64,000 bases of DNA from IMG/VR virus record IMGVR_UViG_3300032116_000001, positions 248,001-312,000 of that record. One strand, written 5' to 3'. Numbering within the stretch: position 1 is the first letter of the stretch; each line of letters starts with the position of its first letter. Below, in pieces: positions 729-56,750 of this stretch. The notes below the pieces were generated by a model that was not told the DNA's origin, did no database searches, and saw only the letters and a list, made by a program, of their open reading frames with translations. The position numbers and the translations under genes were made by a program.

Positions 729-2969
729 ATGGTAGACATTTTGGGTTTAAAAATGACTGCAGATCAAGACAATTTAGTGGAAATCATCGGAGAAGTAACG
801 CGAGTTAATCGCTTTGACAGTGGATACGCCATTGTGACCGTTAAGAAAGGTAATACATCTGTCAAATTAGTGGGAGATATGCCAGGAATTTCCGAGGGTA
901 TGACAATCAAAGCCCTCGCTGAAAAAACTGTACACCAAAAATATGGAGAGCAGTTTAAAGTTCGGGATATTGAGGAAAATGGATTTGCTAATATAGATTC
1001 GCTCATTAAATATTTATCTAGCAACACATTTTCTGGAATAGGGGTTTCCACGGCCAGGTCTATTGTGCAAGTTTTTGGGATGGAAACATTCGATATTTTA
1101 GACAATGATCCAGAAAGACTCTATGATGTCCCAGGCCTATCAGATTCAAAAGTTGACTCTATTATTCAATGTTGGACAGAAAATCGAGAATTTAACAGAA
1201 TTATAGCCGAATTAGTTAAGTATGGCATGACTCCCATGATGGCCAAGAAAGTCTACAAATCGCTTGGCGAATCTGCTTTAGATATGATTCGAGAAAATAT
1301 CTACACATTAACACAAGTTTCGGGAATTGGATTTCTTAAAGCGGATGAAATTGCCCTTAAGTCGGGTGTTAAATTAGATAGTCCACAGCGCGTTGACGCC
1401 GCTGTTTTGTACGTACTCGATCAAGCGTTGTCCAGTGGACATTGTTATTTGCCTCTTCCTGATGTTTCTGAACAATCAGTGGGGCTTCTAAAAGGCAACG
1501 TGAACGCAACACATGTTATGGAGTCTGTCCGAAGGTTGGCTTCGTCATCTCAAATTGTGAACGAAAACCACAAAATATTTCTTTCAGGTATCCGCGAGGC
1601 TGAGAAAAATGTTGCTAGTATGATCACAGATATGTTGTGCTACAAGGGTGATGCCATATACAAAGACCTTGCAGCACTTAGAAAGGATTTAAAACAAATT
1701 GATGTCACAAAAGATATTGTTCTTGCTGAAAAGCAAGAGGAAGCCTTGTTCACGGCCCTTAATTCAAGGGTTGCGATTATAACTGGTGGCCCAGGTGTTG
1801 GTAAAACCACGGTCACGAAAGCCCTTTGTGCGCTTTTCGAAAGGCACAACATGGATTTTTTGCTTTGCGCACCTACGGGCCGCGCTGCAAAAAGGCTTTC
1901 CGAGGCCACAGGATCAGAGGCCTCAACTATACATCGATTGCTAAAAGGGGATTCAACTTCCCAAAAGTTTACTTATCATCAGGGAAATCCACTTTGGGCC
2001 GATGTTGTTGTCATTGATGAATCGTCAATGATGGACATTAGATTGTTTAGATCGATTTTATTTGCAATGGAAAGACACATGAGACTAATTATTGTGGGTG
2101 ATAAAGACCAATTACCATCCGTTGGACCAGGAAATGTATTAAGAGACCTTATTTCATCAGGCAAAGTCCCTTGTGTTAAGTTAGATCAAATATTCAGACA
2201 AAGCAAGGGGAATACTATTATTCCCGTAGCACACGACATTTTGCATGGCGTAGTGCCTGATTTGCCAACACCTATTGAATCTAAAGGAAGAAATTGCGTT
2301 TTAGTTGTCTCTGAAGATCAGGCAACACTGACCGATATGATCATTAAGTTGGTTACTCAATCATTGCCAAAGGCAGGTTTCAAAAATGAAGACATTCAAA
2401 TTCTAACCCCCATGCGTGGTCGGGGACTGGGGGTTGAAGATTTAAATCCACCTCTGCAAGCGGCACTTAATCCGCCATCTGATAAAAAGCCAGAAATCCA
2501 GGATAGAAATCGTATTTTTAGGGTTGGTGATCGCGTTATGCAAATTAAGAATAATTATAAAAAGGGCGATGCGGGGGTTTTCAACGGAGACATAGGTTAT
2601 ATTTCGTCTATTATAAATGACGAAAAAGATGGCACGACAATTTGGGTTAAATACCCCGATATGGAATCGCCAGTTGAGTATTCTCGCGAAGACTGGGATG
2701 AAATTATGCATTGTTTAGCGTGCACTGTTCATAAGTCTCAGGGTGCAGAATATCCTTGCGTAATTTTGGTTCAACATCCTTCCCAATATAATATGCTCCA
2801 ACGCAACTTGATTTACACTGGAGTGACTCGTGCCAAAAAGCTTTGTATTATTGCGGGCACTAAGAAAGCGCTAGAGATAGCAGTGGCAAATGACAGGGAA
2901 ATATCTCGCAATACAACTTTATCTGATCTGTTGAAAAATTTAGTTGACGATACTTCTAGGGCATCATAG
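729..2969 (+). CDS. recD2: RecD2-like SF1B helicase
   Basis: N-terminal HhH repeats (SGIGVSTA, GIGFLKAD), Walker A GGPGVGKT, APTGRAAKRL, IDESSM, VGDKDQLPSVGPG, TVHKSQGAEY, YTGVTRAK. True start may be ATG 753. Ends in TAG. Confidence 0.95.
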   Translation: MVDILGLKMTADQDNLVEIIGEVTRVNRFDSGYAIVTVKKGNTSVKLVGDMPGISEGMTIKALAEKTVHQKYGEQFKVRDIEENGFANIDSLIKYLSSNTFSGIGVSTARSIVQVFGMETFDILDNDPERLYDVPGLSDSKVDSIIQCWTENREFNRIIAELVKYGMTPMMAKKVYKSLGESALDMIRENIYTLTQVSGIGFLKADEIALKSGVKLDSPQRVDAAVLYVLDQALSSGHCYLPLPDVSEQSVGLLKGNVNATHVMESVRRLASSSQIVNENHKIFLSGIREAEKNVASMITDMLCYKGDAIYKDLAALRKDLKQIDVTKDIVLAEKQEEALFTALNSRVAIITGGPGVGKTTVTKALCALFERHNMDFLLCAPTGRAAKRLSEATGSEASTIHRLLKGDSTSQKFTYHQGNPLWADVVVIDESSMMDIRLFRSILFAMERHMRLIIVGDKDQLPSVGPGNVLRDLISSGKVPCVKLDQIFRQSKGNTIIPVAHDILHGVVPDLPTPIESKGRNCVLVVSEDQATLTDMIIKLVTQSLPKAGFKNEDIQILTPMRGRGLGVEDLNPPLQAALNPPSDKKPEIQDRNRIFRVGDRVMQIKNNYKKGDAGVFNGDIGYISSIINDEKDGTTIWVKYPDMESPVEYSREDWDEIMHCLACTVHKSQGAEYPCVILVQHPSQYNMLQRNLIYTGVTRAKKLCIIAGTKKALEIAVANDREISRNTTLSDLLKNLVDDTSRAS

Positions 2970-3087: not shown

Positions 3088-3930
3088 ATGTTAAGAAAAT
3101 TCGCCGAAACTGCCATGTGGCTTGACCAGCAGGGGCTTTTTGCTGAAGCTGATGTTGTAACTGACGTGCTTCGCAAATATGCTGCTAATGCCCTTTGGGA
3201 GGCAGATGACGAAAATGATGTTGAGGAAATTGACCCATATCATGCTCAGATGTATCACACAATTAAGAATTTAGACTTAAGCGACCCTGAACACCTAGAA
3301 ATTATTCGCGGCGCACATCCAGAACTTGCCGATGCGATAGAAAATTATACACCTGGCCGCAGAATACCAATGAAAGAGCCAATGCGGTATGGACCTCGGA
3401 CAGTAATGTTGCCCCCAGGATTTAAAAGCAATTTTGAAAAAAGACTCCCAGAGTTTTTTATGAGCCCAGATCAACTTCAACGCAACAGAGAGGCTTTTTA
3501 TGACAGACTCGATAAGGCCACACGCAACCGATCTCGTCGTGCAACTTTTGATTTAGATTATGCTTCTACAAGCAAACCTGGATATGAGCGGTCTTACATT
3601 TTTGATCCCGAATTAAATAGTCTAATGTCTTCTGACCCCGATTTTAGACCAAGCGAAAACAATGTTAGTCTTTATGACAAAAGAAAGCTTCGCGCACTTT
3701 TTGATCCAACATTTGATCTTGAGTCACTGGATGAAGACGAAAAATCTGGAAGAGAGCGCTATTTAGGCGTTGATCCCAAGACGGGTGAACCATACTCTCT
3801 TCCTAAGCAGATTGGTTGGGCTCACCGTCAAATTAAGCCCGAAAGTGTTTTAACATTCCGCGGTCACAAAGGCGAAGTCGATCCCGAAACTGGAAAGCGC
3901 AAGCCAAATTACTACTTTAAAGCCAGATAG
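3088..3930 (+). CDS. Hypothetical protein with N-terminal A-x2-LD-x2-G-x3-EAD motif; possible virion/internal protein
   Basis: AMWLDQQGLFAEADVVTDVLRKYA; GAGGAG SD; ends TAG-TAA. Confidence 0.75.
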   Translation: MLRKFAETAMWLDQQGLFAEADVVTDVLRKYAANALWEADDENDVEEIDPYHAQMYHTIKNLDLSDPEHLEIIRGAHPELADAIENYTPGRRIPMKEPMRYGPRTVMLPPGFKSNFEKRLPEFFMSPDQLQRNREAFYDRLDKATRNRSRRATFDLDYASTSKPGYERSYIFDPELNSLMSSDPDFRPSENNVSLYDKRKLRALFDPTFDLESLDEDEKSGRERYLGVDPKTGEPYSLPKQIGWAHRQIKPESVLTFRGHKGEVDPETGKRKPNYYFKAR

Positions 3931-34561: not shown

Positions 34562-35788
34562 ATGCCAGAAATATTTCGTATTAGTGGTATGCATATTTCA
34601 AATATAATTTACAAAGGCGACCACGATGAGGCTACAATAAAGCAGATTCAGAATTGCGCTACAGATGAGTATGCGCAGCATGCTGTGCTGTGTGCAGATG
34701 GACACAAAGGTTGGAATATGCCCATTGGCGGCGTAGTGGCTTATGAAAATCACATCAGCCCTGCGGGAGTTGGGTTTGACATTGCGTGTGGTAATAAGGC
34801 CGTGCAGCTCAATGTAACATACGATCAAATTAAGGACGATTTGGCCAAAATCGCTGATGAAATTTTTGCATCTTTATCATTCGGAGTGGGAAGGGTGAAT
34901 AATGAGCGTGTCGAGCATGATGTATTTAATGATGCTGCGTGGCGCAACGTTAACTTTCTTCGTAAAACTCAATCGTTGATGCCTCTTGCTAGAGAACAAC
35001 TTGGTACTATCGGCTCTGGTAATCATTATGTAGATGTGTTCAAAGATGAAAAGGATTGTGTATGGGTGGGTGTTCACTTCGGTAGCCGAGGCCTTGGGCA
35101 CAAGATTGCCACTGAGTTCATTACTCAAGCTGGTGCAAATCCCAATGGTAACATGGATGATCCTCCTTGTCTTTTGGATGTAAACACTTCACTGGGGGAA
35201 GACTATATTCAAGCTATGAATTTAGCAGGACGGTATGCTTATGCAGGAAGAGACTGGGTGTGTCAGAAGGTGGCTTCTATCCTTGGAGCACAGATCGTGG
35301 AAGAGATTCATAATCACCATAATTTTGCATGGAAGGAGAATCATTTTGGCTCGGATTATTGGGTAGTCAGAAAGGGAGCTACTCCCGCGGCTCCTGGGCA
35401 GAAGGGATTTGTCGGCGGATCAATGGGCGAAAACTCTGTGATCCTTGAGGGTGTTGACACTGAAGAATCTGCGAAAATGCTTTATTCTACAGTACATGGC
35501 GCAGGCCGTGTACTGTCAAGAACTCAAGCCGCAGGCAAAACAAGATGGGTGAACGGAGAAAAAATCAGAGTTTCTGAAGGCCTTGTGAACATGGATAATG
35601 TTTTAAAGAATCTTTCCGAAAGTGGTGTAATCCTTCGTGGCGGTGGTGCTGACGAAGCGCCAGAGGTTTACAAGAGATTACCCGAAGTGCTTGCGCATCA
35701 TGGAAATACGATCAAGGTTGTTCACCAATTGAGCCCACTAATTGTGTGTATGGCGGGATCGGAAATCAGAGACCCGTATAAAGATTAA
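34562..35788 (+). CDS. rtcB: RNA 3'-phosphate/5'-OH ligase RtcB
   Basis: ADGHKG..MPIGG, VGFDIACG, LGTIGSGNHY, HFGSRGLG, HNHHN, RKGATPA, HGAGR, DEAPEVYK. Confidence 0.95.
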   Translation: MPEIFRISGMHISNIIYKGDHDEATIKQIQNCATDEYAQHAVLCADGHKGWNMPIGGVVAYENHISPAGVGFDIACGNKAVQLNVTYDQIKDDLAKIADEIFASLSFGVGRVNNERVEHDVFNDAAWRNVNFLRKTQSLMPLAREQLGTIGSGNHYVDVFKDEKDCVWVGVHFGSRGLGHKIATEFITQAGANPNGNMDDPPCLLDVNTSLGEDYIQAMNLAGRYAYAGRDWVCQKVASILGAQIVEEIHNHHNFAWKENHFGSDYWVVRKGATPAAPGQKGFVGGSMGENSVILEGVDTEESAKMLYSTVHGAGRVLSRTQAAGKTRWVNGEKIRVSEGLVNMDNVLKNLSESGVILRGGGADEAPEVYKRLPEVLAHHGNTIKVVHQLSPLIVCMAGSEIRDPYKD

Positions 35789-44302: not shown

Positions 44303-45178
44303 ATGAAGAAAGCCTTTACGCTCATCGAACTTCTTGTTGTTATCGCAATTATTGCTATTTTAGCTGCGATTCTTTTCCCCGTCTTTTCTCAGGCCAAGCT
44401 TGCCGCCAAGAAAACTGTTGGTTTAACCCAAGTTAAACAGATTGGAACATCAATGCAGCTGTATGTCGGCGATTATGATGACATGCTGTTTCCGTACCGA
44501 CTTAATGGTACACAAAACCCCGATTATGCCCGCGCCATTGCTGCTCGGGGGCAGGCGTATGCCGATAGCGTTGTAGGAACTAGTGCAAGAAATGTTATTT
44601 TCTTTAACCAGCTTCTGCAACCATATATGAAAAATAATGATATTTTCAAGGCACCTACCAAGCCAAATGCCTGGGCTGGCGTTGATACTTTCGGTTCTGA
44701 CACTGAACCTGCATTCCGATCTTACGGCGGACAAAACAGCTATGGTGTTAACAATTATGTGTTTACATCTCAGGCGGGCACGTCATCAATCGGCGGGGGG
44801 CTTAATATGGGCGAAATAGCAGAACCAAGCAATACTTTGATTATGGTTGATGCAAGCTATTATAATGTTCTTCCCCGATTCGTTGGAAGACTTAATGGAT
44901 ACACTGGCACATTTAATGTGTGCAGCAGCAGTTACCCGTTGTATTGGAAGAATCTCGGCAACTCCTATCTCTTTAGATGGAATGGTGGACCAAACACGCC
45001 ATCTGACGCTGAAGCTCTGCGATTGATTAATAACCGATATAATGGACCATTGAATATGGTTCAGGGCGACACTAGTTCAAGAGCCGTTGCAGCTAATGCA
45101 ATTCTGAACAACCTGAGAGATCGGGGCGCAGAATCATTTTGGGACCCATACAAACTCGGCAACACTCCATGTCCGTAA
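44303..45178 (+). CDS. Prepilin-type N-terminal cleavage/methylation domain protein (DUF1559-like)
   Basis: [35 protein letters not shown]...Y..DYDD, PYMKN, SYG.N. Confidence 0.92.
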
Positions 45179-45255: not shown

Positions 45256-46017
45256 ATGAGACAGGCTTTTACACTTATTGAATTACTTGTTGTGATCGCA
45301 ATTATCGCGGTTTTGGCTGCAATCCTTTTCCCAGTTTTTTCACAAGCAAAGGAAGCTGCCAAGAAAACTCAGTCGATTTCCAACATGCGCCAACTTGGTA
45401 TTTCCTGGCAGCTTTACAATACTGACTACGATGATACCTTAATGAGAGTTTCTGTGCCTGATGAGCATGGTGTGGTTTATTGGTGGGGATGTTGGGAAGA
45501 AGACGAACAAGAACTTAGAGTTGAGGAAGGCCTTTTATATCCTTATACTCGAAACAATGGTATTTACAAGGATTCATCTTTTAATGCTCAAGTTACGGGA
45601 AGTATGAATTTCTCTGGGTATGGATATAATTATGCTTATTTGAGTCCGTCAACTTATTCTCCTCCGAACTGGGAAGAAAATCCCATTCCCGTAAATGCTT
45701 CATCGATTGAGTTTCCATCTGAGACAGTCGCTTTTGCATCAAATGCGAGACTAAATACATGGGCTTATGACAATCCTGTTTTAGAGGGCACGGGATACTT
45801 AGAGCCACCTTCTTTCGATTTCCCAACATTTCAGGGCCGACACAATAAGCATGGCGTAGTACTTTGGTCTGACGGGCATGCCAAGGCGCAAAAGCCTATT
45901 TTGAGGACTGGGGACTTCGGCTGGGGATATAACGGGGCTCAGTTTGCCCCATATAATCTTGGGGAAATAGATAAAGATGGTAATCTTTCAACTGATGAAC
46001 TTTTTGATTTAGAGTGA
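45256..46017 (+). CDS. Prepilin-type N-terminal cleavage/methylation protein with C-terminal H-X9-DG motif
   Basis: [16 protein letters not shown]...QAKEAAKKT; GYGYN; [16 protein letters not shown]. Confidence 0.92.
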
Positions 46018-46064: not shown

Positions 46065-46422
46065 GGGGGCATAAGGGATCGATTGACGTTGCTATCTTAT
46101 GTTTGCAAGGCGCGGATGTATCCTTGGCCGCGATAACAAAGGATGCAAAAAGTAAATGCGGAAAACAACTTCGCTTTCGCTGCTTAATTAAGCTGGCGCA
46201 TGAACCTGAGACGAGTCTGTAGTTAATGGGGATTGTAAAATAAATCAGACTTAGCTTTGAAACTTCGGCTTGTAGTTGAAAAAGCGATATTAATCAAGCT
46301 GCTGTCAAGAAAGTGCTGGCCTCTAGCCAAAGCTTGACTTAAGATTAATATGAGGAGAACCTTGTGGCGAGCATAGGCTCTGTACGGACAACAAGCGGGT
46401 TCAAATCCCGCTGCCTCCACCA
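46065..46422 (+). ncRNA. ssrA: tmRNA with tag (A)AENNFAFAA
   Basis: 5' GGGGGCA pairs with 3' TGCCTCC-ACCA including the G3-U Ala determinant; T-arm GCGGG-TTCAAAT-CCCGC; resume codon GCG at 46158, TAA at 46185-46187. Confidence 0.95.
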
Positions 46423-46427
46423 ATTTT

Positions 46428-46461
46428 GCAGTATGATTTTTTCATACTGCTTTTATTTTTT
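46428..46461 (+). terminator. Intrinsic terminator after the tmRNA
   Basis: GCAGTATGA-TTTTT-TCATACTGC followed by TTTTATTTTTT. Confidence 0.85.
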
Positions 46462-46617
46462 GGGCGGACTCAACTTAAACATGCCCACAGGGGCTTTTTT
46501 AATAAAATGCTGAGCAGCCAAAAGTGAATAGAATTTTTTAATATCTCCTGCTTTAAATTTGACTCCGCTATAAACTCCAGGCCGACTGCATTCTACATAA
46601 AAAACTTTTCGGTTCAT
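46453..46617 (-). CDS. Small hypothetical protein (54 aa, MNRKVFYVECSRPG...)
   Basis: Manually read ORF that fills the gap between the tmRNA and the tRNAs. Confidence 0.45.
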   Translation of the reverse strand: MNRKVFYVECSRPGVYSGVKFKAGDIKKFYSLLAAQHFIKKAPVGMFKLSPPKK

Positions 46618-46691
46618 ATGATTTTTTTTGGGTTTTTAGTCCCAAATTGCCTACTTTTTATTTAAAAATACGTATTATAATTATATTGCTT

Positions 46692-46762
46692 GCTCCATTA
46701 GCTCAATGGTAGAGCTGGGGTCTCTAAAACCTTGGTCGCGGGTTCGATTCCCGTGTGGAGCA
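46692..46762 (+). tRNA. tRNA with CUA anticodon (amber suppressor) no. 1; CCA not encoded
   Basis: Acceptor GCTCCAT/GTGGAGC, D-arm GCTC..GAGC, anticodon arm GGGGT-CTCTAAA-ACCTT (CTA at 46724-46726), T-arm GCGGG-TTCGATT-CCCGT, A73. Confidence 0.85.
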
Positions 46763-46783
46763 GACAATATATTAAAAATACGC

Positions 46784-46858
46784 GCTCTAGTAACTCAGTG
46801 GTAGAGTGGCCCTCTCTAAAAGGGCATGTCGCGGGTTCGAGTCCCGCCTAGAGCGCCA
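46784..46858 (+). tRNA. tRNA with CUA anticodon (amber suppressor) no. 2
   Basis: Acceptor GCTCTAG/CTAGAGC, D-arm ACTC..GAGT, anticodon arm GCCCT-CTCTAAA-AGGGC (CTA at 46816-46818), T-arm GCGGG-TTCGAGT-CCCGC, G73-CCA. Confidence 0.93.
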
Positions 46859-46882
46859 AGGTTTCTAAAACAATACAGAGTC

Positions 46883-47098
46883 ATGTCAAACAAAAACAAT
46901 TATCAAGAATCTGATCAACCAGACGGCGTATTTCTTAAAGGGGTCATGTATGGGGCCGTCATAAGCATTTTTATTTTAATTATAGCAAAGGCCTTATCAT
47001 TGATTTTGAGCCTAAATATATTTGCCAGCTTGGGCATTTCCGTGCTTGCTATTTTCTTAATTGCTTTATTTTTTGAAATTTTTCGGAAAAGATGCTAA
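46883..47098 (+). CDS. Small membrane protein (2 TM segments)
   Basis: MSNKNNYQ... followed by two hydrophobic helices; start moved downstream of the tRNA. Confidence 0.7.
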   Translation: MSNKNNYQESDQPDGVFLKGVMYGAVISIFILIIAKALSLILSLNIFASLGISVLAIFLIALFFEIFRKRC

Positions 47099-47115
47099 CT
47101 TTTTTGTTGAAAAGC

Positions 47116-47140
47116 AGGTATTAAAGATATAACACGAGAA
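47116..47140 (+). promoter_or_regulatory. Putative late promoter AGG-N18-AGAA upstream of the leader/tRNA-Lys unit
   Basis: Exact spacing match to the six other copies. Confidence 0.5.
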
Positions 47141-47155
47141 TTAAGGTAATTCAAA

Positions 47156-47197
47156 ATGAGACACAACATTCTTAAACGCAAACCTAAACATTACTAG
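47156..47197 (+). CDS. Putative leader peptide MRHNILKRKPKHY-amber
   Basis: TAAGGT SD 8 nt upstream; three AAA codons; TAG stop; lies within alternative hairpins. Confidence 0.6.
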   Translation: MRHNILKRKPKHY

Positions 47198-47314
47198 GTT
47201 CTAGTTCTTTCCGAGGCTAGAATCTGGCCTCTTTGCGTATGTGTCTGCAAATCAAAAGTTATTTTTAACTTTTCCTGCGATCAGAAAACCTTCGGGGCCA
47301 AAACTTTAAATTTT

Positions 47315-47390
47315 GGGTCAGTAGCTCAGTTGGTAGAGCAGCGGTCTTTTAAACCGCGGGTCGCGGGTTCGAGCCCCGCCTGGCCCACCA
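47315..47390 (+). tRNA. tRNA-Lys(UUU)
   Basis: GGGTCAG/CTGGCCC-ACCA; anticodon arm GCGGT-CTTTTAA-ACCGC. Confidence 0.96.
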
Positions 47391-47401
47391 GAATTTTTCA
47401 T

Positions 47402-47477
47402 GGAGGGATAGCTCAGTCGGTAGAGCAGCTGACTCTTAATCAGCATGTCGTGGGTTCGATCCCCACTCCCTTCACCA
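47402..47477 (+). tRNA. tRNA-Lys(CUU)
   Basis: GGAGGGA/TCCCTTC-ACCA; anticodon arm GCTGA-CTCTTAA-TCAGC. Confidence 0.96.
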
Positions 47478-47482
47478 ATATA

Positions 47483-47590
47483 TGGTGTTCTGGTACAAGT
47501 GGATTAACTCTGCGCCACAGGAAAAAGACGATGGAAAAACCCATCCATATTTGCAGAGATGTTCAGGCTCGTCCCCTGATAATTTCATCA
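47483..47590 (+). ncRNA. tRNA-like structured element or pseudo-tRNA
   Basis: D-loop-like AAGTGGATTAA, CTCTGC/GCAGAG stem enclosing a GATGG/CCATC hairpin, T-arm-like TCAGG-CTCGTCC-CCTGA. Confidence 0.35.
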
Positions 47591-47632
47591 AGATTGATTT
47601 ATTTTATTGGGCAAATTAACGGCTCAATTAAA

Positions 47633-47752
47633 AAGGAGGTCTCACCTATGTTGTAGGTCATTCGTCCGCCTTAATCATATTTGTAATTCCATTCACTAAC
47701 TTCGTTCATGGCTTTGCATAGCCCACGATTACAAACAGAAATACAAATATGA
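47633..47752 (+). promoter_or_regulatory. Amber-containing leader (ATG TTG TAG GTC ATT CGT CCG CCT TAA, 47648-47674) and an 11-bp helix over the next start codon
   Basis: AAGGAGG SD at 47633-47639; TCATATTTGTA (47675-47685) is exactly complementary to TACAAATATGA (47742-47752), which contains ATG 47749. Confidence 0.7.
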
Positions 47753-48192
47753 AAAACACACTTAATAAAAACATAACATCGACGTTCTTTAACTCTCCTG
47801 ATGGCTACGAAAAGCTTCGGTCTAAATGGAGTGAAATTGTAAATTCTAACTCAGAATACAAACTTACTGCAGCAGATTACATGCTTTATGCAATTCTTCG
47901 TGGAAAAGATTGGAGAAAAGGATTTACAATGCCCAAAAAGCAAGACCCATCTTGGGAGTACGAGACTCCAATTATTGTTTCAAACTCAATGTATACTTCT
48001 AGTACAATCCTGAGATCAATGGCTTGTCCAGTATCAAAGAGTCAAAAATTTTGGGCTGATAATTTCGGGGATATTTTAAATCTCGAAACTGCAAAATCTA
48101 TTTCTAAATTTTATTATCGTCTTGATAGAAGGGAAAATATACTTAAGCAAAGCGCTTATATTTTGGAGGATTCTTCCGAGAATGTGGCCTAA
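47749..48192 (+). CDS. Hypothetical phage protein, first gene of the leader-controlled operon
   Basis: 147 aa; LTAADYMLYAILRGKDWRKGFT; no clear SD of its own. Confidence 0.8.
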   Translation: MKNTLNKNITSTFFNSPDGYEKLRSKWSEIVNSNSEYKLTAADYMLYAILRGKDWRKGFTMPKKQDPSWEYETPIIVSNSMYTSSTILRSMACPVSKSQKFWADNFGDILNLETAKSISKFYYRLDRRENILKQSAYILEDSSENVA

Positions 48193-48775
48193 AATTGTAA
48201 TAAATGAAGATTTGCAAGTGGTTGAGACTTTGGAAACTTATGGATCACGAAGTCTGGCTCAGGCATTCGACCACTATCAAGCGCCTCGTATTAGGGATGG
48301 CGTCGAGCTTGTAACCCTTGCTGACCCAGAGACCTGGGTGCCAGCAGACTATGATAAACAATCCGAAAATTGGACCGAAAGGTCTGTTATTTTAATGTCA
48401 AAGCTATATAAAGCTTTTGAAGAAAAAATTAAAATGGTTTCTGATTATTACGTGCTCACAATGGGAGAAAGCGGAGAAAGGTTTCAACGAATTTATGCTA
48501 TTGGCGACGACCATATCACGGTTGAATATTCTTCTCGTGGATGTTTGAGGGGGTGCTGTCCCGATGAAGAATATTCTTATGATATTCCTATACAGGCACT
48601 CTGGGACACCAGCGTTATTGACAATATGAAAACCGAAAAAGAAAAAGCCGCGCAAGAGAAAAAAGCACAAGAGATTAAAGATGCCCGCGACCGCGAAAGA
48701 CAACGTAAAAAAGAACGAGAAGAAAATGAACTTAAAGAATATCATCGGCTTATGGAAAAATACAAAGGAAACTAA
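48182..48775 (+). CDS. Hypothetical protein with charged C-terminal helix
   Basis: GGAGG upstream of ATG 48182; CxxCC; ends ELKEYHRLMEKY. Confidence 0.75.
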   Translation: MWPKIVINEDLQVVETLETYGSRSLAQAFDHYQAPRIRDGVELVTLADPETWVPADYDKQSENWTERSVILMSKLYKAFEEKIKMVSDYYVLTMGESGERFQRIYAIGDDHITVEYSSRGCLRGCCPDEEYSYDIPIQALWDTSVIDNMKTEKEKAAQEKKAQEIKDARDRERQRKKEREENELKEYHRLMEKYKGN

Positions 48776-48776
48776 A

Positions 48777-49502
48777 ATGACTACCGAATACAAACCGCCA
48801 TATGTTGCTCGCCTTGGTGAAGGTTTTTTAAAGCCTTGCAAGTTTAGTGACGGAAAAGTTCACAAGATTAAATATCACTATGTTGATGTCTATGAGGTTA
48901 ATGAGGACTCAGAAACTAAAATAGGAACATACGAGGTTTCCGATTTTAAGTCCCCGCGTGTTGTGTTTCATCCGTTTAGACATGACGGTGAATGGTACGC
49001 ACTAGTAAGTGAAAGCAAAAAAATATTTGTCTATTCATTGCCAGAAATGAAATTATTAGCTGAACTTGAACCACAGGGTTGCATTAAGTTTTTAGAATTT
49101 TATATACCCAGATTTCATCATGTAGTATATAAAGGAGTTGCTTTTACTCTTGTGGACAAAGAAATTGAAGAAGATTATAAGGATAATGAAGCATGGTGCC
49201 ATGCAGATTTTGCTTTTGTAATGGGGTATGACCCGTTCTGTAATTCGCCTAATTACGTAAATATTGTTGATCTTTCAAATATTAAGATCGGAGAAATTAA
49301 ATTTAAGCAAGAATATTGGCATGAATGTCCGCAGTGGCTTGATTTAAATCAAATTGTGCAAATATCCTATTGGGATAAAAGCTTCCCTGCATTTGCAATC
49401 GCCACAGTAGAGTATGCTTCAACGTCAACGGGCTTAAAATGCGGAAACAATGGATGGACTGACGAAACTCTTGGTGCCATAGATAGTGGTGAAAAATCAT
49501 GA
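48777..49502 (+). CDS. Hypothetical beta-rich protein
   Basis: AAGGA SD; ATG 1 nt after the previous stop. Confidence 0.75.
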   Translation: MTTEYKPPYVARLGEGFLKPCKFSDGKVHKIKYHYVDVYEVNEDSETKIGTYEVSDFKSPRVVFHPFRHDGEWYALVSESKKIFVYSLPEMKLLAELEPQGCIKFLEFYIPRFHHVVYKGVAFTLVDKEIEEDYKDNEAWCHADFAFVMGYDPFCNSPNYVNIVDLSNIKIGEIKFKQEYWHECPQWLDLNQIVQISYWDKSFPAFAIATVEYASTSTGLKCGNNGWTDETLGAIDSGEKS

Positions 49503-49825
49503 GCTAGACTACCGCGCCTTATATATATATTTTCGTTAGAAAAGACATTGGCGTAGCGGACCAGATGGTTCAGGCCTGTCATGCTGCGCAAGAATCGGGA
49601 GCTAAATTTGGCTGCCCCGATTCTTGCCACCTTGTTCTTTGCTCGGTTGAAAATACATTTGAATTGGAAAAAATAAGCTATGTTTGCCAAGAGAATGACA
49701 TAAAATTTGTTACTTTTTACGAGCCTGATGACCAGATGGGAGACACTGCAATTTGCACGGAACCAATCTGGGGAGAAAAAAGAAAGGCTTTTAGAAAATT
49801 TAACACATGGAAACCCGTGGTATAA
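49499..49825 (+). CDS. Pth2-like peptidyl-tRNA hydrolase with in-frame TAG at codon 3 (49505-49507)
   Basis: ATG AGC TAG ACT..., then YIFVRKDI...QMVQACHAAQE...HLVLCSVEN..EL...FYEPD....TAICTEP; ATGA overlap with the upstream stop; the ORF-track start at 49565 would remove the conserved VRxD strand. Confidence 0.8.
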
Positions 49826-53054: not shown

Positions 53055-53347
53055 CAATTCTCTATAAGTCTTACGGACAGCTGGTTTTGTGGGCCAACTG
53101 TGAAGAAATTGGCGGTGATTACTGGCAACATGCTCATATTATTGATGATAGTGAATGGGAACGCTTACTTAATGAAGCGCAAGGGAATAAGGACGTGATT
53201 AGGCCACAAGATATTGATTCTACTGGGCACACAGTGCCGCTTTTAGAAGTTACGGAAGACCTTCTTAGTATAATGTGCGAAAGCGAAGGTGTTGAGTTAA
53301 TTCATATTTGGCCTGATGACCAGGAGGAACAGGATGACATGTTATGA
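53051..53347 (+). CDS. Hypothetical acidic protein
   Basis: ATGA-coupled 98-aa ORF. Confidence 0.7.
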   Translation: MTILYKSYGQLVLWANCEEIGGDYWQHAHIIDDSEWERLLNEAQGNKDVIRPQDIDSTGHTVPLLEVTEDLLSIMCESEGVELIHIWPDDQEEQDDML

Positions 53348-53552
53348 GGCTTTTGACGCCCTGCTGGCAGGCAAGCGAGTGCGTCGAGCAGCGTGGACTG
53401 AAGCGACTTCATGGAAGATGTCGTCCAAGCAGGATGATTACCCAACTCTTATACAAATGTGGGTGGGTAATACCGTAATCACTACGTATGTCACCGAGGA
53501 AGACCTCACTGCTACCGACTGGGAAGTTGTACCCAACCAAGAAAATAAATAA
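53334..53552 (+). CDS. DUF2829 / Tad2-like (Thoeris anti-defence 2-like) protein
   Basis: MTCYEAFDALLAGKRVRRAAW...EDLTATDWEVV; AGGAGG SD. Confidence 0.75.
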   Translation: MTCYEAFDALLAGKRVRRAAWTEATSWKMSSKQDDYPTLIQMWVGNTVITTYVTEEDLTATDWEVVPNQENK

Positions 53553-53557
53553 AAACA

Positions 53558-54007
53558 ATGACACAAACCATATATTTAGCTGGCCCTATTGGGGGATTCG
53601 CCAAATGCGCCGATTGGCGCAAAGAAGCAGAACAAGCCTTAGAAAATCATAATTTAATTGGCCTCAACCCTCTTCGTCATAAAGAGCAAATGCTCATGAA
53701 CACAAGCGCCATGACTGAACTAAATGATACGATTCACGCCCTTGAAAAGATTATCATGAGACGAGACGCTTTAGATATAGAGCAGTCTAGTGGTATGATT
53801 GTATGTTTTCAAGGGGCGGAAAAAGTCAGCGTTGGAACATGTATAGAAGTTGGGATTGCTTATGCACTTAAAAAACCAATTATTCTAGTTATGGACAGGG
53901 GTGTTGGGAACCCACACGATCATGCTATGGTCAGAGAAGCCGCTTGGGCGATAGTCAACGACATTGAAGAAGCAGTGAGGCTTATGGCAAGCTTTCTGAA
54001 TAAATAA
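53558..54007 (+). CDS. Nucleoside 2-deoxyribosyltransferase-like protein
   Basis: IYLAGPI, LNPLR, RD..DI, SVGTCIEVGIAYALKKPI. Confidence 0.85.
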   Translation: MTQTIYLAGPIGGFAKCADWRKEAEQALENHNLIGLNPLRHKEQMLMNTSAMTELNDTIHALEKIIMRRDALDIEQSSGMIVCFQGAEKVSVGTCIEVGIAYALKKPIILVMDRGVGNPHDHAMVREAAWAIVNDIEEAVRLMASFLNK

Positions 54008-55723: not shown

Positions 55724-56275
55724 ATGAATCATCCAAACATACTTGTAAATTTTTTTGGCGGCCCAGCAATTGGAAAAAGCAATTGCGCAAGATCGCTTTG
55801 TTCATTATTGAGTGAATTCGGTATATCAAACGAATATGTTCCCGAATTTGCAAAAAAATTAACTTGGAAATCTGACTTAAACACCAGATCAAACCAAGTG
55901 TTTGTTACAGCAACACAATTTGACGACATACTAACTGTTTATGATAAGGTGTCCGTAACGGTCACTGATGGCCCCTTAATTCTGGGCATGGTTTATCCAG
56001 GCCCATGCTGCACTCCCGTTTGGAAAGAACATGTTATTGAAATGCATAATTATTTCAACAACATCAACATATTTATTCAAAGAAATAATGAATGGTATCA
56101 GCCAATTGGCAGAACCCAAACACTTGAAGAATGCATAAGTGCCGATCAAAGAACTTTAGACTTCTTGAATCAATATCAAATTGATTATGTCACCATCCCA
56201 GCTGACAGACACATGTCTAGTCGTGTCTTTGATGTTTTAATGGAGAAAATAAAAAATGAGAAAACACACACATAA
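55724..56275 (+). CDS. P-loop NTPase, NadR/AAA_28-like
   Basis: NFFGGPAIGKS, EFAK.L.W, TDGPL, GRTQTLEE. Confidence 0.8.
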   Translation: MNHPNILVNFFGGPAIGKSNCARSLCSLLSEFGISNEYVPEFAKKLTWKSDLNTRSNQVFVTATQFDDILTVYDKVSVTVTDGPLILGMVYPGPCCTPVWKEHVIEMHNYFNNINIFIQRNNEWYQPIGRTQTLEECISADQRTLDFLNQYQIDYVTIPADRHMSSRVFDVLMEKIKNEKTHT

Positions 56276-56750
56276 ATACATTGAAGTGATCGTGAACGGC
56301 AAAGTTATTAGTCGATTTACTCGCCCAGAAGCTTACAAAAGTATAAATGAAGCTCGCGACAATTATTCAAGTATTTACAAGAAATGGAAAAGAGATGACT
56401 CTGATTATCCATGTCTTAATTGCGATGGGGCAGGCACTTATCATAAGTTTGAAGATAGAGACATTATAGAGGGCTACAAACTGGCTCCGCTTTATACATG
56501 TAAATCGTGCAGTGGCTCTGGCCGCGGCCCCAAAGAGATGTTTAAGGCATACTATGACGCTGAAAAACAAAAGATTAAAGCGCAACAACAAAAATTTGAC
56601 AAAGACTTAGATTCTTTTATGGAAGCGATACAAGTTCTTAGCCCCGAACAAATTTTAACACTAAATAAAATGCTAGGAAATGTGTGTCCAATTTATGAAA
56701 AAAATGCCCCAATTAAGAAAATTAAGGTGAGAAAAAATGGAATGGCGTAG
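56256..56750 (+). CDS. Protein with DnaJ-type zinc-finger repeats
   Basis: CLNCDGAG and CKSCSGSG; ends in TAG. Confidence 0.75.
   Translation: MRKHTHKYIEVIVNGKVISRFTRPEAYKSINEARDNYSSIYKKWKRDDSDYPCLNCDGAGTYHKFEDRDIIEGYKLAPLYTCKSCSGSGRGPKEMFKAYYDAEKQKIKAQQQKFDKDLDSFMEAIQVLSPEQILTLNKMLGNVCPIYEKNAPIKKIKVRKNGMA

What the first reader, a model, noticed from the sequence alone, without database searches (positions are those of the whole stretch)
46065..49825. Candidate amber-readthrough-gated translation-rescue system in a standard-code phage
Seen in sequence, within 3.8 kb: a tmRNA; two tRNAs with CUA anticodons; a leader ORF ending in TAG ahead of two tRNA-Lys genes; a second leader with TAG at codon 3; and a coupled four-gene operon ending in a Pth2-like hydrolase that also has TAG at codon 3. 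The other long genes need no TAG readthrough, so this is not genome-wide recoding. Established: Pth recycles dropped-off peptidyl-tRNA, tmRNA rescues stalled ribosomes, and UAG is read only by RF1. Inference: UAG acts here as a conditional switch. When suppressor tRNA outcompetes RF1 (late infection, or RF1/termination impaired by host defence), the rescue operon is switched on. I do not know of a description of this circuit.
Basis: partly seen in the sequence, partly recalled or inferred. Interest (0 to 1): 0.95.

Follow-up and report, generated by a model that had tools for sequence, protein, structure and literature searches.

The report
Amber-stop-gated phage Pth2-like operon
A giant phage carries its own UAG-reading tRNAs beside an operon whose short leader and last gene each hold an early UAG stop, a layout shared by dozens of phages, so the operon is probably made only when the phage's suppressor tRNA is working.

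Summary

- **Leader.** A Shine-Dalgarno-led leader reads M-L-UAG-x-x-R-P-P-UAA. It recurs upstream of the same gene family in at least 14 phage lineages. Arg and Pro codons vary only at synonymous sites, so the codons after UAG are translated.
- **Helix.** In six lineages, RNA just after the leader's stop pairs with the start region of the next gene. The arms differ in sequence but stay complementary.
- **Last gene.** It has a Pth2 fold. In 39 of 52 further phage contigs it starts M-x-UAG, usually with no other start codon. In 37 of 52, a tRNA with anticodon CUA lies within 4 kb.
- **Second leader.** A small ORF ending in UAG ahead of the tRNA-Lys genes is also conserved.

My reading is an attenuator that senses amber suppression, plus a UAG gate inside the last gene. 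I found no description of this in the literature I searched.

Three caveats:
- "Standard-code phage" holds only for this 64-kb replication and metabolism region. About half of the related loci look UAG-recoded.
- The tmRNA is not a conserved neighbour.
- The "rescue" function is inferred; the canonical catalytic lysine of Pth2 is missing.

The parts
46065..46422 (+). tmRNA gene (tag peptide AENNFAFAA). It is a neighbour in this phage only and is not a conserved part of the module.
   Evidence: ARAGORN; Rfam RF00023, 91.3 bits, E=2.7e-35. No tmRNA found in the relatives scanned.
46428..46450 (+). Terminator-like hairpin with a T-run just after the tmRNA.
   Evidence: Pattern scan.
46691..46763 (+). 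Suppressor-type tRNA, anticodon CUA, copy 1. It has a U1-A72 pair and G73, which are Gln-like features.
   Evidence: ARAGORN; Rfam tRNA, 60.5 bits; alignment. The amino-acid identity is not resolved.
46784..46858 (+). Suppressor-type tRNA, anticodon CUA, copy 2. G73 and an encoded CCA end; 80% identical to the tRNA-CUA of relative L015.
46883..47098 (+). Small predicted membrane protein (71 aa). A similar ORF sits at the same place in relative L015.
   Evidence: ORF list; L015 1371-1577. No family hit.
47156..47197 (+). Leader ORF 1: MRHNILKRKPKHY followed by UAG, with three Lys codons, upstream of the tRNA-Lys genes.
   Evidence: Conserved as MRHNTLKRKQKHY-UAG in L015 and L017, with synonymous codon changes.
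47194..47231 (+). Two mutually exclusive hairpins that begin at the UAG of leader ORF 1: 47194-47227 versus 47213-47231.
   Evidence: RNAfold with and without masking the 10 nt after the stop. The same pair of alternatives, with different sequence, occurs in L015 and L017.
47315..47390 (+). tRNA-Lys (UUU).
47402..47477 (+). tRNA-Lys (CUU).
47198..47653 (+). Reading frame that stays open after the UAG of leader ORF 1. It crosses both tRNA-Lys genes and joins leader ORF 2 in frame.
   Evidence: Stops per frame are 0 / 11 / 6; 2 of 20000 shuffles give 0 stops. The same holds in L017, where the frame is open for 409 codons up to the leader's UAG.
47633..47674 (+). Leader ORF 2 with its Shine-Dalgarno site: AAGGAGG, 8 nt, then M-L-UAG-V-I-R-P-P-UAA (UAG 47654-47656, UAA 47672-47674).
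   Evidence: Sequence. Conserved in at least 14 lineages with synonymous variation in the R-P-P codons. It is the only such site in the window.
47675..47752 (+). Long-range helix. The 5' arm (47675-47689) lies just after the leader's stop; the 3' arm (47738-47752) covers the start codon of gene 1.
   Evidence: MFE -18.7 kcal/mol, z = -4.8. Cognate arm duplex -13.5 kcal/mol against a shuffle mean of -4.1; arms from other lineages do not substitute.
47749..48192 (+). Gene 1: 147 aa, all-helical, function unknown, the conserved partner of the Pth2-like protein.
   Evidence: 940 clusters at 50% identity. Natural fusions to the Pth2-like domain, P0185 and P0169. AF2 pLDDT 88, with no PDB or BFVD match.
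48182..48775 (+). Gene 2: 197 aa, Cys-rich motif plus a charged C-terminal tail, function unknown. It overlaps gene 1 by 11 nt.
   Evidence: Present in L001, L017 and L019.
48777..49502 (+). Gene 3: 241 aa, function unknown, optional (absent in L017, L019, L021 and L022).
49499..49825 (+). Pth2-fold gene. ATG overlaps the TGA of gene 3, then AGC, then TAG (49505-49507), then 105 codons. No ATG, GTG or TTG lies between the TAG and the first core strand.
   Evidence: AF2 pLDDT 90. All top Foldseek hits are Pth2 proteins, TM 0.7-0.8. Family profile against PDB sequences: a peptidyl-tRNA hydrolase at E=2.9e-4. Early TAG seen in 39 of 52 further homologues.

Best explanation
This is a phage module in which decoding of UAG by a phage-encoded tRNA-CUA acts as the on-switch for a small operon. 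The core of that operon is a Pth2-fold protein and its helical partner, gene 1.

**Gate 1: a leader-peptide attenuator.**
- Without suppression, ribosomes translate M-L and terminate at UAG, 18 nt before the leader's real end. A helix then keeps the start region of gene 1 closed.
- With suppression, ribosomes run on to R-P-P-UAA. Pro-Pro followed by a stop is a context of slow peptide-bond formation and slow release.
- A ribosome held there sits on the 5' arm of the helix and frees the start region of gene 1.

**Gate 2: a UAG inside the last gene.**
- The Pth2-like gene begins ATG-x-UAG on the stop codon of the upstream gene.
- The full-length protein therefore also needs suppression. Failure costs only a dipeptide.

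**A second leader.**
- A UAG-terminated leader with switching hairpins sits ahead of the tRNA-Lys genes.
- Its frame stays open through those genes, which suggests that read-through also carries ribosomes, and perhaps transcription, through that stretch.

**Shown versus inferred.**
- Shown: conservation, coding-type evolution after the UAG, covarying helices, the Pth2 fold, and linkage to tRNA-CUA.
- Inferred: stalling at PP-stop in the unknown host, opening of the helix, the enzyme's activity, and the biological purpose. A likely purpose is to supply extra peptidyl-tRNA or aminoacyl-tRNA hydrolase capacity in step with suppression.
For: **TAGs are real.** They are identical in six independent assemblies.

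**Leader M-(x)-UAG-...-P-P-stop is conserved.**
- Found upstream of gene 1 in the window, L001, L015/16, L017, L019, L021, L025, L027, L029, L044, L049, L052/53, L055 and L068/69.
- Arg is encoded by CGT, CGC, CGA or AGA, and both Pro codons vary only at the third position. That is the pattern of amino-acid selection downstream of the UAG.

**The helix covaries.**
- In six lineages the 5' arm starts 0-5 nt after the leader's stop and the 3' arm covers the Shine-Dalgarno site or the AUG of gene 1.
- Cognate duplexes are -12.6 to -19.3 kcal/mol, against shuffle means of -4 to -8. Arms from different lineages do not pair.

**The Pth2-like gene carries an early UAG.**
- 39 of 52 further IMG/VR homologues start M-x(0-5)-UAG. 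In 38 of these no canonical start lies between the UAG and the conserved core.
- The base after the UAG is a purine in 34 of 36 distinct cases.
- In the window and in L001 the Ser codon before the UAG is AGC versus TCT.

**tRNA-CUA is linked.** It lies within 4 kb on the same strand in 37 of 52 loci and is the only tRNA in 15 of them. It lies directly upstream of the leader in L011, L020, L021, L022 and L025.

**Gene 1 and the Pth2-like domain occur fused** in P0185 and P0169.

**Literature.**
- Release is slow after C-terminal Pro, and PP, DP and EP ends induce SsrA tagging (PMC7246954, citing Hayes 2002 and Pierson 2016).
- Poly-Pro before a stop lowers termination efficiency (PMC6412442).
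Against: - No experiment shows suppression, stalling or helix opening.
- The host is unknown, and EF-P could relieve the Pro-Pro pause.
- L025 lacks the long-range helix. L011, L022 and L024 have different leader ends, which run up to or overlap the gene 1 start.
- In the window the 3' arm covers the AUG, but gene 1 has no clear Shine-Dalgarno site.
- In L012, L019, L024, L017 and L022 a TTG, GTG or ATG lies 1-4 codons after the UAG, so read-through may not be obligatory there.
- The amino acid carried by the tRNA-CUA could not be determined.
- About half of the related loci look UAG-recoded, so the UAGs may be ordinary recoded codons rather than dedicated sensors.
- The Pth2-like protein lacks the canonical Gly-Lys catalytic lysine and scores below the Pfam cut-off.
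Confidence: 0.65

Rival explanations
1. This is ordinary stage-specific recoding. The phage reads UAG as an amino acid late in infection, as code-15 phages do. The UAGs here are then just recoded sense codons in a late-expressed module, and the leader is not a dedicated sensor.
For: - 28 of the 59 related loci examined have an internal TAG in at least 25% of their long ORFs, against 3% in the window.
- The window holds replication and metabolism genes (RtcB, DNA ligase, clamp loader, NadE, GroEL). Recoded phages keep such genes in standard code (Borges et al. preprint).
Against: - The UAG sits at codon 2-7 in 36 distinct starts and at codon 3 of the leader. It is not scattered through the genes.
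- 17 loci with the early UAG show no local recoding.
- A 9-codon leader with a conserved PP-stop and a helix onto the next start site has no role as a mere recoded gene.

This rival concerns purpose more than mechanism; both readings need suppression.
Confidence: 0.2
2. There is no read-through. ATG-x-TAG are two-codon mini-ORFs that only serve termination-reinitiation, or act like lambda bar minigenes. The Pth2-like protein then starts at a nearby canonical or non-canonical codon.
For: - A TTG, GTG or ATG lies 1-4 codons after the TAG in L012, L019, L024, L017 and L022.
- ATA and ATT codons follow the TAG in the window.
- A strong Shine-Dalgarno site plus a two-codon ORF is the architecture of the lambda bar minigenes (own knowledge).
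Against: - The codons after the leader's UAG evolve synonymously, with R-P-P kept.
- The TAG is in frame with the Pth2-like ORF in every case, and the stop is always TAG.
- 38 homologues have no canonical start after the TAG.
- A suppressor tRNA gene is linked.
Confidence: 0.08
3. The feature is a sequencing or assembly artefact, or a decaying pseudogene.
For: Gene callers truncate the last gene to 86 aa.
Against: - Six assemblies are identical at these sites.
- The feature is conserved across dozens of divergent phages.
- A confident fold is predicted only when the residues upstream of the called start are included.
Confidence: 0.01

Closest known systems
Stop-codon recoding in phages and the 'code-change module' (suppressor tRNA, aaRS and release factor upstream of lysis genes; Borges et al., bioRxiv 10.1101/2021.08.26.457843)
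   Same: A phage-encoded suppressor tRNA makes translation of genes with in-frame stops depend on the stage of infection. Relatives of this locus carry a release-factor-like gene next to the module.
   Different: Here the UAG sits in a dedicated 9-codon leader and at codons 2-7 of one gene family. In the window it is not spread over structural or lysis genes. That paper mentions no leader, uORF, Pth2 or tmRNA.
Leader-peptide translational attenuation (the ermC, cat and cmlA type)
   Same: A short upstream ORF is followed by a helix that sequesters the next gene's start site. A ribosome held on the leader opens that helix.
   Different: The input is not a drug bound in the exit tunnel. It is whether a UAG inside the leader is read by a suppressor tRNA, and the pause site is a Pro-Pro-stop.
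The tna operon leader TnaC, and the synthetic 'Uaa transcriptional switch' (a TAG placed in a leader peptide; PMC6412442, section 6)
   Same: Translating a leader past a given point controls the downstream genes. The synthetic switch uses an amber codon in the leader as that control point. TnaC ends in R-P-stop and stalls at termination.
   Different: This locus would be a natural version of the synthetic design. Control appears to act on translation, through a helix over the start site. Control through Rho is possible but untested.
PepNL, the E. coli arrest peptide whose stalling is cancelled by read-through of its UGA (PMC11890864)
   Same: Read-through of a leader's stop codon is the regulatory input for the downstream gene.
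   Different: PepNL relies on near-cognate Trp-tRNA at its own terminal stop, and read-through relieves the arrest. Here a dedicated suppressor tRNA reads an internal UAG, and read-through leads the ribosome to the pause site.
Pth2 peptidyl-tRNA hydrolases (PF01981: archaeal and eukaryotic Pth2, human Bit1/PTRH2)
   Same: The fold is the same (TM 0.7-0.8 to 3erj, 1rlk, 2zv3, 1wn2, 1q7s and 1xty). The R-x-D...Q-x-x-H-A motif is shared.
   Different: The score is below the Pfam cut-off (13 bits against 23). The Gly-Lys segment with the catalytic lysine is missing, and Glu stands where the catalytic Asp aligns. The protein is always paired with, and sometimes fused to, a helical partner of unknown fold.
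prfB autoregulation (RF2 level sensed at an in-frame UGA)
   Same: Competition at one early in-frame stop codon sets the expression of a translation factor.
   Different: prfB senses release-factor activity through a +1 frameshift. This module would sense suppressor-tRNA activity through read-through.

Membership tests
Pth2 peptidyl-tRNA hydrolase (PF01981) | Alpha/beta Pth2 fold | tested here: met
   AF2 model, pLDDT 90.3. The 15 best Foldseek hits in the PDB include 14 Pth2 chains plus 2gax (Atu0240, unknown function), with probability 0.99-1.00 and TM 0.5-0.8.
Pth2 peptidyl-tRNA hydrolase (PF01981) | Sequence score above Pfam's gathering threshold | tested here: not met
   13.2 bits against a cut-off of 23, E=0.11. 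A family profile reaches a PDB peptidyl-tRNA hydrolase at E=2.9e-4.
Pth2 peptidyl-tRNA hydrolase (PF01981) | Catalytic Lys (in the Gly-Lys segment) and Asp | tested here: not met
   The Gly-Lys segment is a gap in the profile alignment to two Pth2 chains. The invariant Glu72 aligns with the Asp. Arg11, Asp13, Gln22 and His25 are shared. The residue roles come from my own knowledge of the S. solfataricus enzyme.
Pth2 peptidyl-tRNA hydrolase (PF01981) | Hydrolysis of peptidyl-tRNA | not testable with these tools
   Needs an enzyme assay or complementation of a pth(ts) laboratory strain.
tmRNA (RF00023) | Covariance-model score above the gathering score, with a tag reading frame | tested here: met
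   91.3 bits against 47, full-length match. Tag peptide AENNFAFAA.
Amber suppressor tRNA | Cloverleaf tRNA with anticodon CUA | tested here: met
   Two genes found by ARAGORN, with Rfam tRNA scores of 60.5 and 69 bits.
Amber suppressor tRNA | Aminoacylation and decoding of UAG | not testable with these tools
   Identity elements are ambiguous. G73, and U1-A72 in copy 1, are Gln-like; the overall sequence is closest to tRNA-Lys.
Leader-peptide translational attenuator | Short upstream ORF with its own ribosome-binding site and a conserved peptide | tested here: met
   AAGGAGG, 8 nt, then ATG. The M-L-UAG...R-P-P-stop peptide is conserved with synonymous changes.
Leader-peptide translational attenuator | RNA structure that sequesters the downstream start site and lies within reach of a ribosome paused on the leader | tested here: met
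   Six lineages. The 5' arm starts 0-5 nt after the stop, and the arms covary. The structure is not seen in L025.
Leader-peptide translational attenuator | Ribosome pausing on the leader changes downstream expression | not testable with these tools
   Needs toeprinting and reporter assays.
UAG-recoded (code-15-like) phage | In-frame TAG in a sizeable share of genes | tested here: not met
   Window: 2 of 62 long ORFs, both likely spurious. The other 315 kb of the genome could not be read. 28 of the 59 related loci examined do meet this feature.

The most novel reading that the evidence does not exclude
Phages that carry amber suppressor tRNAs have evolved a natural suppression sensor. It is a 9-codon leader (M-L-UAG-x-x-R-P-P-stop) that opens the start site of the next gene only when UAG is decoded. 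It is coupled to a second UAG gate at the door of a Pth2-fold enzyme. In this clade there is also a third UAG-ended leader. Read-through of that leader sends ribosomes straight through two tRNA-Lys genes, in a frame kept open by selection, into the sensor. That would link suppressor activity, tRNA-Lys supply and a hydrolase-based clean-up function in one transcript.
Probability: 0.45. Interest if true: 0.88.

Novelty: new variant of a known kind. Interest (0 to 1): 0.82.

Why it matters
- **A testable mechanism.** Stop-codon recoding in phages is currently inferred from where in-frame stops lie. Here a compact, conserved cis-element appears to read out suppressor-tRNA activity directly. That gives a defined handle on how phages time or meter a change of genetic code.
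- **New players.** It ties a previously unnoticed protein pair to suppressor tRNAs: a Pth2-fold protein and a helical partner whose family has 940 sequence clusters. This points to a cost of suppression that phages must manage.
- **A possible tool.** The leader is a natural counterpart of engineered amber-codon switches. It could serve as a small, portable reporter of suppression efficiency.

Tried and rejected
- **blastn against cultured phages.** The 4-kb region matched only at tRNA genes.
- **Scans with gene 3.** Searches of IMG/VR and JGI metagenomes returned only the source contig.
- **Exact leader pattern in IMG/VR.** It found only the source contig.
- **Gene 1 in cellular genomes.** Its profile found nothing in 185,579 bacterial and archaeal genomes, so the host stays unknown.
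- **MAFFT plus RNAalifold on the leader-to-start region.** This gave no consensus structure because the arms were misaligned. I replaced it with per-sequence folding and a cognate versus non-cognate duplex test.
- **Back-up stops.** TAG-terminated genes having a back-up stop within 6 codons is not significant: 3 of 3, against a background of about 36%.
- **tRNA-CUA isotype.** Similarity comparison was inconclusive.
- **Functions of genes 1-3.** No hits in Pfam, NCBIfam, PHROGs or PDB sequences. The confident gene 1 model has no structural match in the PDB or BFVD.
- **Release-factor-like gene.** Relatives have one, but the window does not.
- **Rest of the genome.** I could not read the remaining ~315 kb, so late-gene recoding in this phage is untested.
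- **Leader ORF 1 elsewhere.** It was not found outside the window/L015/L017 clade.

Full report
**Observation**

- ARAGORN and Rfam agree on a tmRNA at 46065-46422 (91 bits against a gathering score of 47).
- They also agree on two different tRNAs with anticodon CUA (46691-46763 and 46784-46858) and on tRNA-Lys UUU and CUU (47315-47390 and 47402-47477).
- Reading the sequence places a 13-codon ORF ending in TAG at 47156-47197.
- A second leader has AAGGAGG at 47633-47639, 8 nt, then ATG TTG TAG at 47648-47656. It continues V-I-R-P-P to TAA at 47672-47674.
- Four tightly coupled genes follow: 47749-48192, 48182-48775 and 48777-49502. Then comes an ATG that overlaps the preceding TGA, followed by AGC, TAG (49505-49507) and 105 in-frame codons to 49825.
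- Six independent assemblies of the same phage, from different samples, are identical at all these sites, so the TAGs are not errors.
- The leader is the only Shine-Dalgarno-preceded ATG-NNN-TAG in 64 kb.

**Context**

- The window is positions 248001-312000 of a 378,848-bp IMG/VR contig. Other assemblies of the same phage reach 421 kb.
- It has 40% G+C, is 93% coding in the standard code, and uses TAA 57, TGA 17 and TAG 3 times as a stop.
- Recognisable genes are an exonuclease V-like helicase, an RtcB RNA ligase, PRPP synthase, DNA ligase, a clamp loader, GroEL, NadE, glycosyltransferases and two pilin-like proteins.
- This is a replication and metabolism region with no structural genes. The absence of TAG-interrupted genes here therefore says little about late genes elsewhere in the genome.

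**The leader is conserved and is translated past its UAG**

Homologues of gene 1 led to divergent relatives with 35-61% G+C. Directly upstream of gene 1, each carries a short ORF of the form M-(x)-UAG-...-P-P-stop.
- L015/L016, L017, L001 (this contig begins at the UAG), L019, L021 (ends R-P-P-P), L025 and L027 (ends E-P-P).
- L029, L044, L049, L052/53, L055 and L068/69.
- Among the R-P-P leaders, Arg is encoded by CGT, CGC, CGA or AGA, and both Pro codons vary freely at the third position only. Leu before the UAG is TTG or CTG.
- This is selection on amino acids encoded after the UAG, so ribosomes must read through it.
- L011, L022/L026 and L024 are variants. They have one to three UAGs and an internal P-P, and they end at or next to the gene 1 start.

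**A covarying helix links the leader's stop to the next start site**

- In the window, L015, L017, L019, L001 and L021, the minimum-energy fold of the spacer is closed by a helix. Its 5' arm begins 0-5 nt after the leader's stop. Its 3' arm covers the Shine-Dalgarno site or the AUG of gene 1 (in the window, 47675-47689 with 47738-47752). MFE z-scores run from -1.5 to -4.8.
- Cognate arm duplexes are -12.6 to -19.3 kcal/mol, against shuffle means of -4 to -8 (0 to 2.8% of shuffles reach the observed value).
- Arms taken from different lineages pair poorly, for example window with L015 -3.0 and L019 with window -4.2. Pairing is kept while the sequence changes.
- Geometry fits a switch. The UAG lies 18 nt before the final stop, so a ribosome terminating at UAG does not reach the 5' arm. 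A ribosome with the final stop in its A site covers that arm.
- L025 lacks this helix.
- MAFFT plus RNAalifold failed because the arms were misaligned.

**The last gene has a Pth2 fold and is amber-gated across its family**

- Pfam gives only a sub-threshold PTH2 match (13 bits against 23).
- An AlphaFold model built on the family alignment is confident (pLDDT 90). Its best PDB matches are all Pth2 proteins (3erj, 1rlk, 2zv3, 1wn2, Bit1 1q7s, 1xty; TM 0.7-0.8).
- An 11-member profile finds a PDB peptidyl-tRNA hydrolase at E=2.9e-4.
- Arg11, Asp13, Gln22 and His25 are shared with Pth2. The Gly-Lys segment is missing, and Glu72 aligns with the catalytic Asp. Activity is therefore plausible but unproven.
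- The first core strand and four invariant residues lie upstream of the ATG that gene callers use. In the window and in L001 no ATG, GTG or TTG lies between the TAG and that strand.
- The Ser codon before the TAG is AGC in the window and TCT in L001 and L012.
- A scan of IMG/VR with the family profile gave 52 further loci, on contigs of 8-527 kb. In 39 of them the gene starts M-x(0-5)-TAG just before the conserved core, and 38 of these have no canonical start in between. The TAG is at codon 3 in 19 of 36 distinct starts, and the next base is a purine in 34 of 36. To my knowledge a purine after UAG favours amber suppression.
- In a few lineages (L012, L019, L024, L017, L022) a start codon follows closely, so read-through may not be obligatory everywhere.

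**Linkage to suppressor tRNAs, and the partner protein**

- A tRNA-CUA lies within 4 kb, always on the same strand, in 37 of the 52 loci. In 15 of these it is the only tRNA found.
- In L011, L020, L021, L022 and L025 it lies directly upstream of the leader, which suggests one transcript.
- Gene 1 precedes the Pth2-like gene in all twelve loci fetched through gene 1 whose downstream sequence was available. My profile detected gene 1 upstream of the Pth2-like gene in only 9 of the 52 IMG/VR loci.
- The gene 1 family has 940 clusters at 50% identity. It is absent from 185,579 cellular genomes.
- Gene 1 occurs fused to the Pth2-like domain in P0185 and P0169, so the two probably act together.
- Its confident all-helical model (pLDDT 88) matches nothing in the PDB or BFVD.
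- Genes 2 and 3 are optional and of unknown function.
- No tmRNA was found in the relatives scanned, so the tmRNA is not a conserved part of the module.

**The leader ahead of the tRNA-Lys genes**

- The 13-codon ORF (MRHNILKRKPKHY, then UAG) recurs in L015 and L017 as MRHNTLKRKQKHY-UAG, with synonymous changes.
- It is followed in both lineages by two mutually exclusive hairpins that differ in sequence. The first includes the UAG. The second forms when the 10 nt after the stop are masked.
- Its frame stays open after the UAG for 152 codons, across both tRNA-Lys genes, and joins the second leader in frame. Stops per frame are 0, 11 and 6, and 2 of 20000 shuffles give 0.
- In L017 the frame is open for 409 codons and ends exactly at the second leader's UAG.
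- I cannot explain this with confidence. One reading is that read-through lets ribosomes follow the polymerase through the tRNA genes, which would shield the transcript from polarity. Another is that the three Lys codons report tRNA-Lys supply. The window also encodes RtcB, a tRNA-repair ligase.

**Recoding status**

I applied a crude test: long ORFs delimited by TAA or TGA that carry a TAG at least 40 codons from both ends.
- The window scores 2 of 62. The related loci score 122 of 494, and 28 of 59 loci are at 25% or more.
- The early TAG of the Pth2-like gene occurs both in loci that look recoded (22) and in loci that do not (17).
- The module therefore belongs to the toolkit of amber-suppressing phages. 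Calling this one a "standard-code phage" is justified only for the 64 kb seen.

**Mechanism proposed**

- Without suppression, the leader is a two-codon ORF ending at UAG, the helix stays closed and gene 1 is not initiated.
- With suppression, ribosomes reach R-P-P-UAA. This is a context of slow Pro-Pro bond formation and slow release. C-terminal PP, DP and EP ends induce SsrA tagging, and release after Pro is inefficient (PMC7246954). Poly-Pro before a stop lowers termination (PMC6412442).
- The paused ribosome melts the 5' arm and exposes the gene 1 start.
- Translation then passes by coupling to the last gene, where a second UAG must be read.
- Conservation, coding-type evolution, covariation, the fold and the linkage are shown. 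Pausing, helix opening, the enzyme's activity and the purpose are inferred.
- A reasonable purpose is to scale hydrolase capacity with suppression, which increases read-through and aborted translation.

**Comparison with what is known**

- Recoding as a timer of late genes, and a "code-change module", are described for phages (Borges et al.). Huge phages are known to carry tmRNAs and release factors (PMC7162821).
- Leader-peptide attenuation (erm and cat type), TnaC, the engineered amber-codon leader switch (PMC6412442) and PepNL (PMC11890864) each share part of the logic.
- None of the papers found mentions a natural leader that senses a suppressor tRNA, or a Pth2-like gene tied to suppressor tRNAs.
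- I therefore rate this a new variant built from known principles.

**Limits**

- I could not read the rest of the genome, determine the host, or assign the amino acid of the tRNA-CUA.

Noticed in passing
L001:2299-2972 (relative). The P0009 contig has the same gene order, but no DNA was available.: A release-factor-like gene sits right after the Pth2-like gene. It lacks domain 1 and has a GGQ motif and a P-P-T tripeptide. It is split by CTT TGA C, so a +1 shift is needed, as in prfB but at a different place in the protein. Pfam RF-1 scores 1.7e-31, and PCRF pieces lie on both sides of the shift. The window has no such gene.
   Followed up: partly
L017:261-360 and L015:1938-2037: A 100-nt tRNA that ARAGORN calls tRNA-Pro(GGG) looks like a tRNA-Lys(UUU) with an insertion of about 25 nt in the anticodon loop.
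   Followed up: no
L015:~2130-2858 and L017:801-1274: Homing endonuclease genes (GIY-YIG in L015, HNH in L017) are inserted between the tRNA-Lys genes and the leader. Both keep the frame of leader ORF 1. The HNH gene ends at the leader's own UAG.
   Followed up: partly
window 34562-35788: An RtcB-type tRNA/RNA ligase (phrog_1075, 1.9e-77). Together with the phage tRNA-Lys genes, it hints at repair or replacement of tRNAs cut by host anticodon nucleases.
   Followed up: no
window 44303-45178 and 45256-46017: Two paralogous proteins with a prepilin-type N-terminal methylation motif (PF07963), which is unusual cargo for a phage. Their first 115 nt are 77% identical.
   Followed up: no
window ~53316-53552 and 53558-54007 (from L005 7752-7988 and 7994 onwards): Precomputed Pfam hits on the identical locus L005: a Tad2-like small protein (PF11195, a family known as anti-Thoeris), next to a nucleoside deoxyribosyltransferase-like gene.
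   Followed up: no
L019:6203-6718: One relative carries a canonical PTH2 gene (PF01981) about 4 kb upstream of the amber-gated Pth2-like module. The two are therefore not redundant copies.
   Followed up: partly
L019:15673-17781: A 574-aa ART-PolyVal-like gene ends in TAG and is in frame with the next 122-aa gene. Read-through would fuse them.
   Followed up: no
window 729-2969, 3088-3930, 56256-56750: The only three window genes that end in TAG each have a TAA or TGA 1-6 codons further on. This is not significant against the background, where about 36% of other genes have the same.
   Followed up: yes
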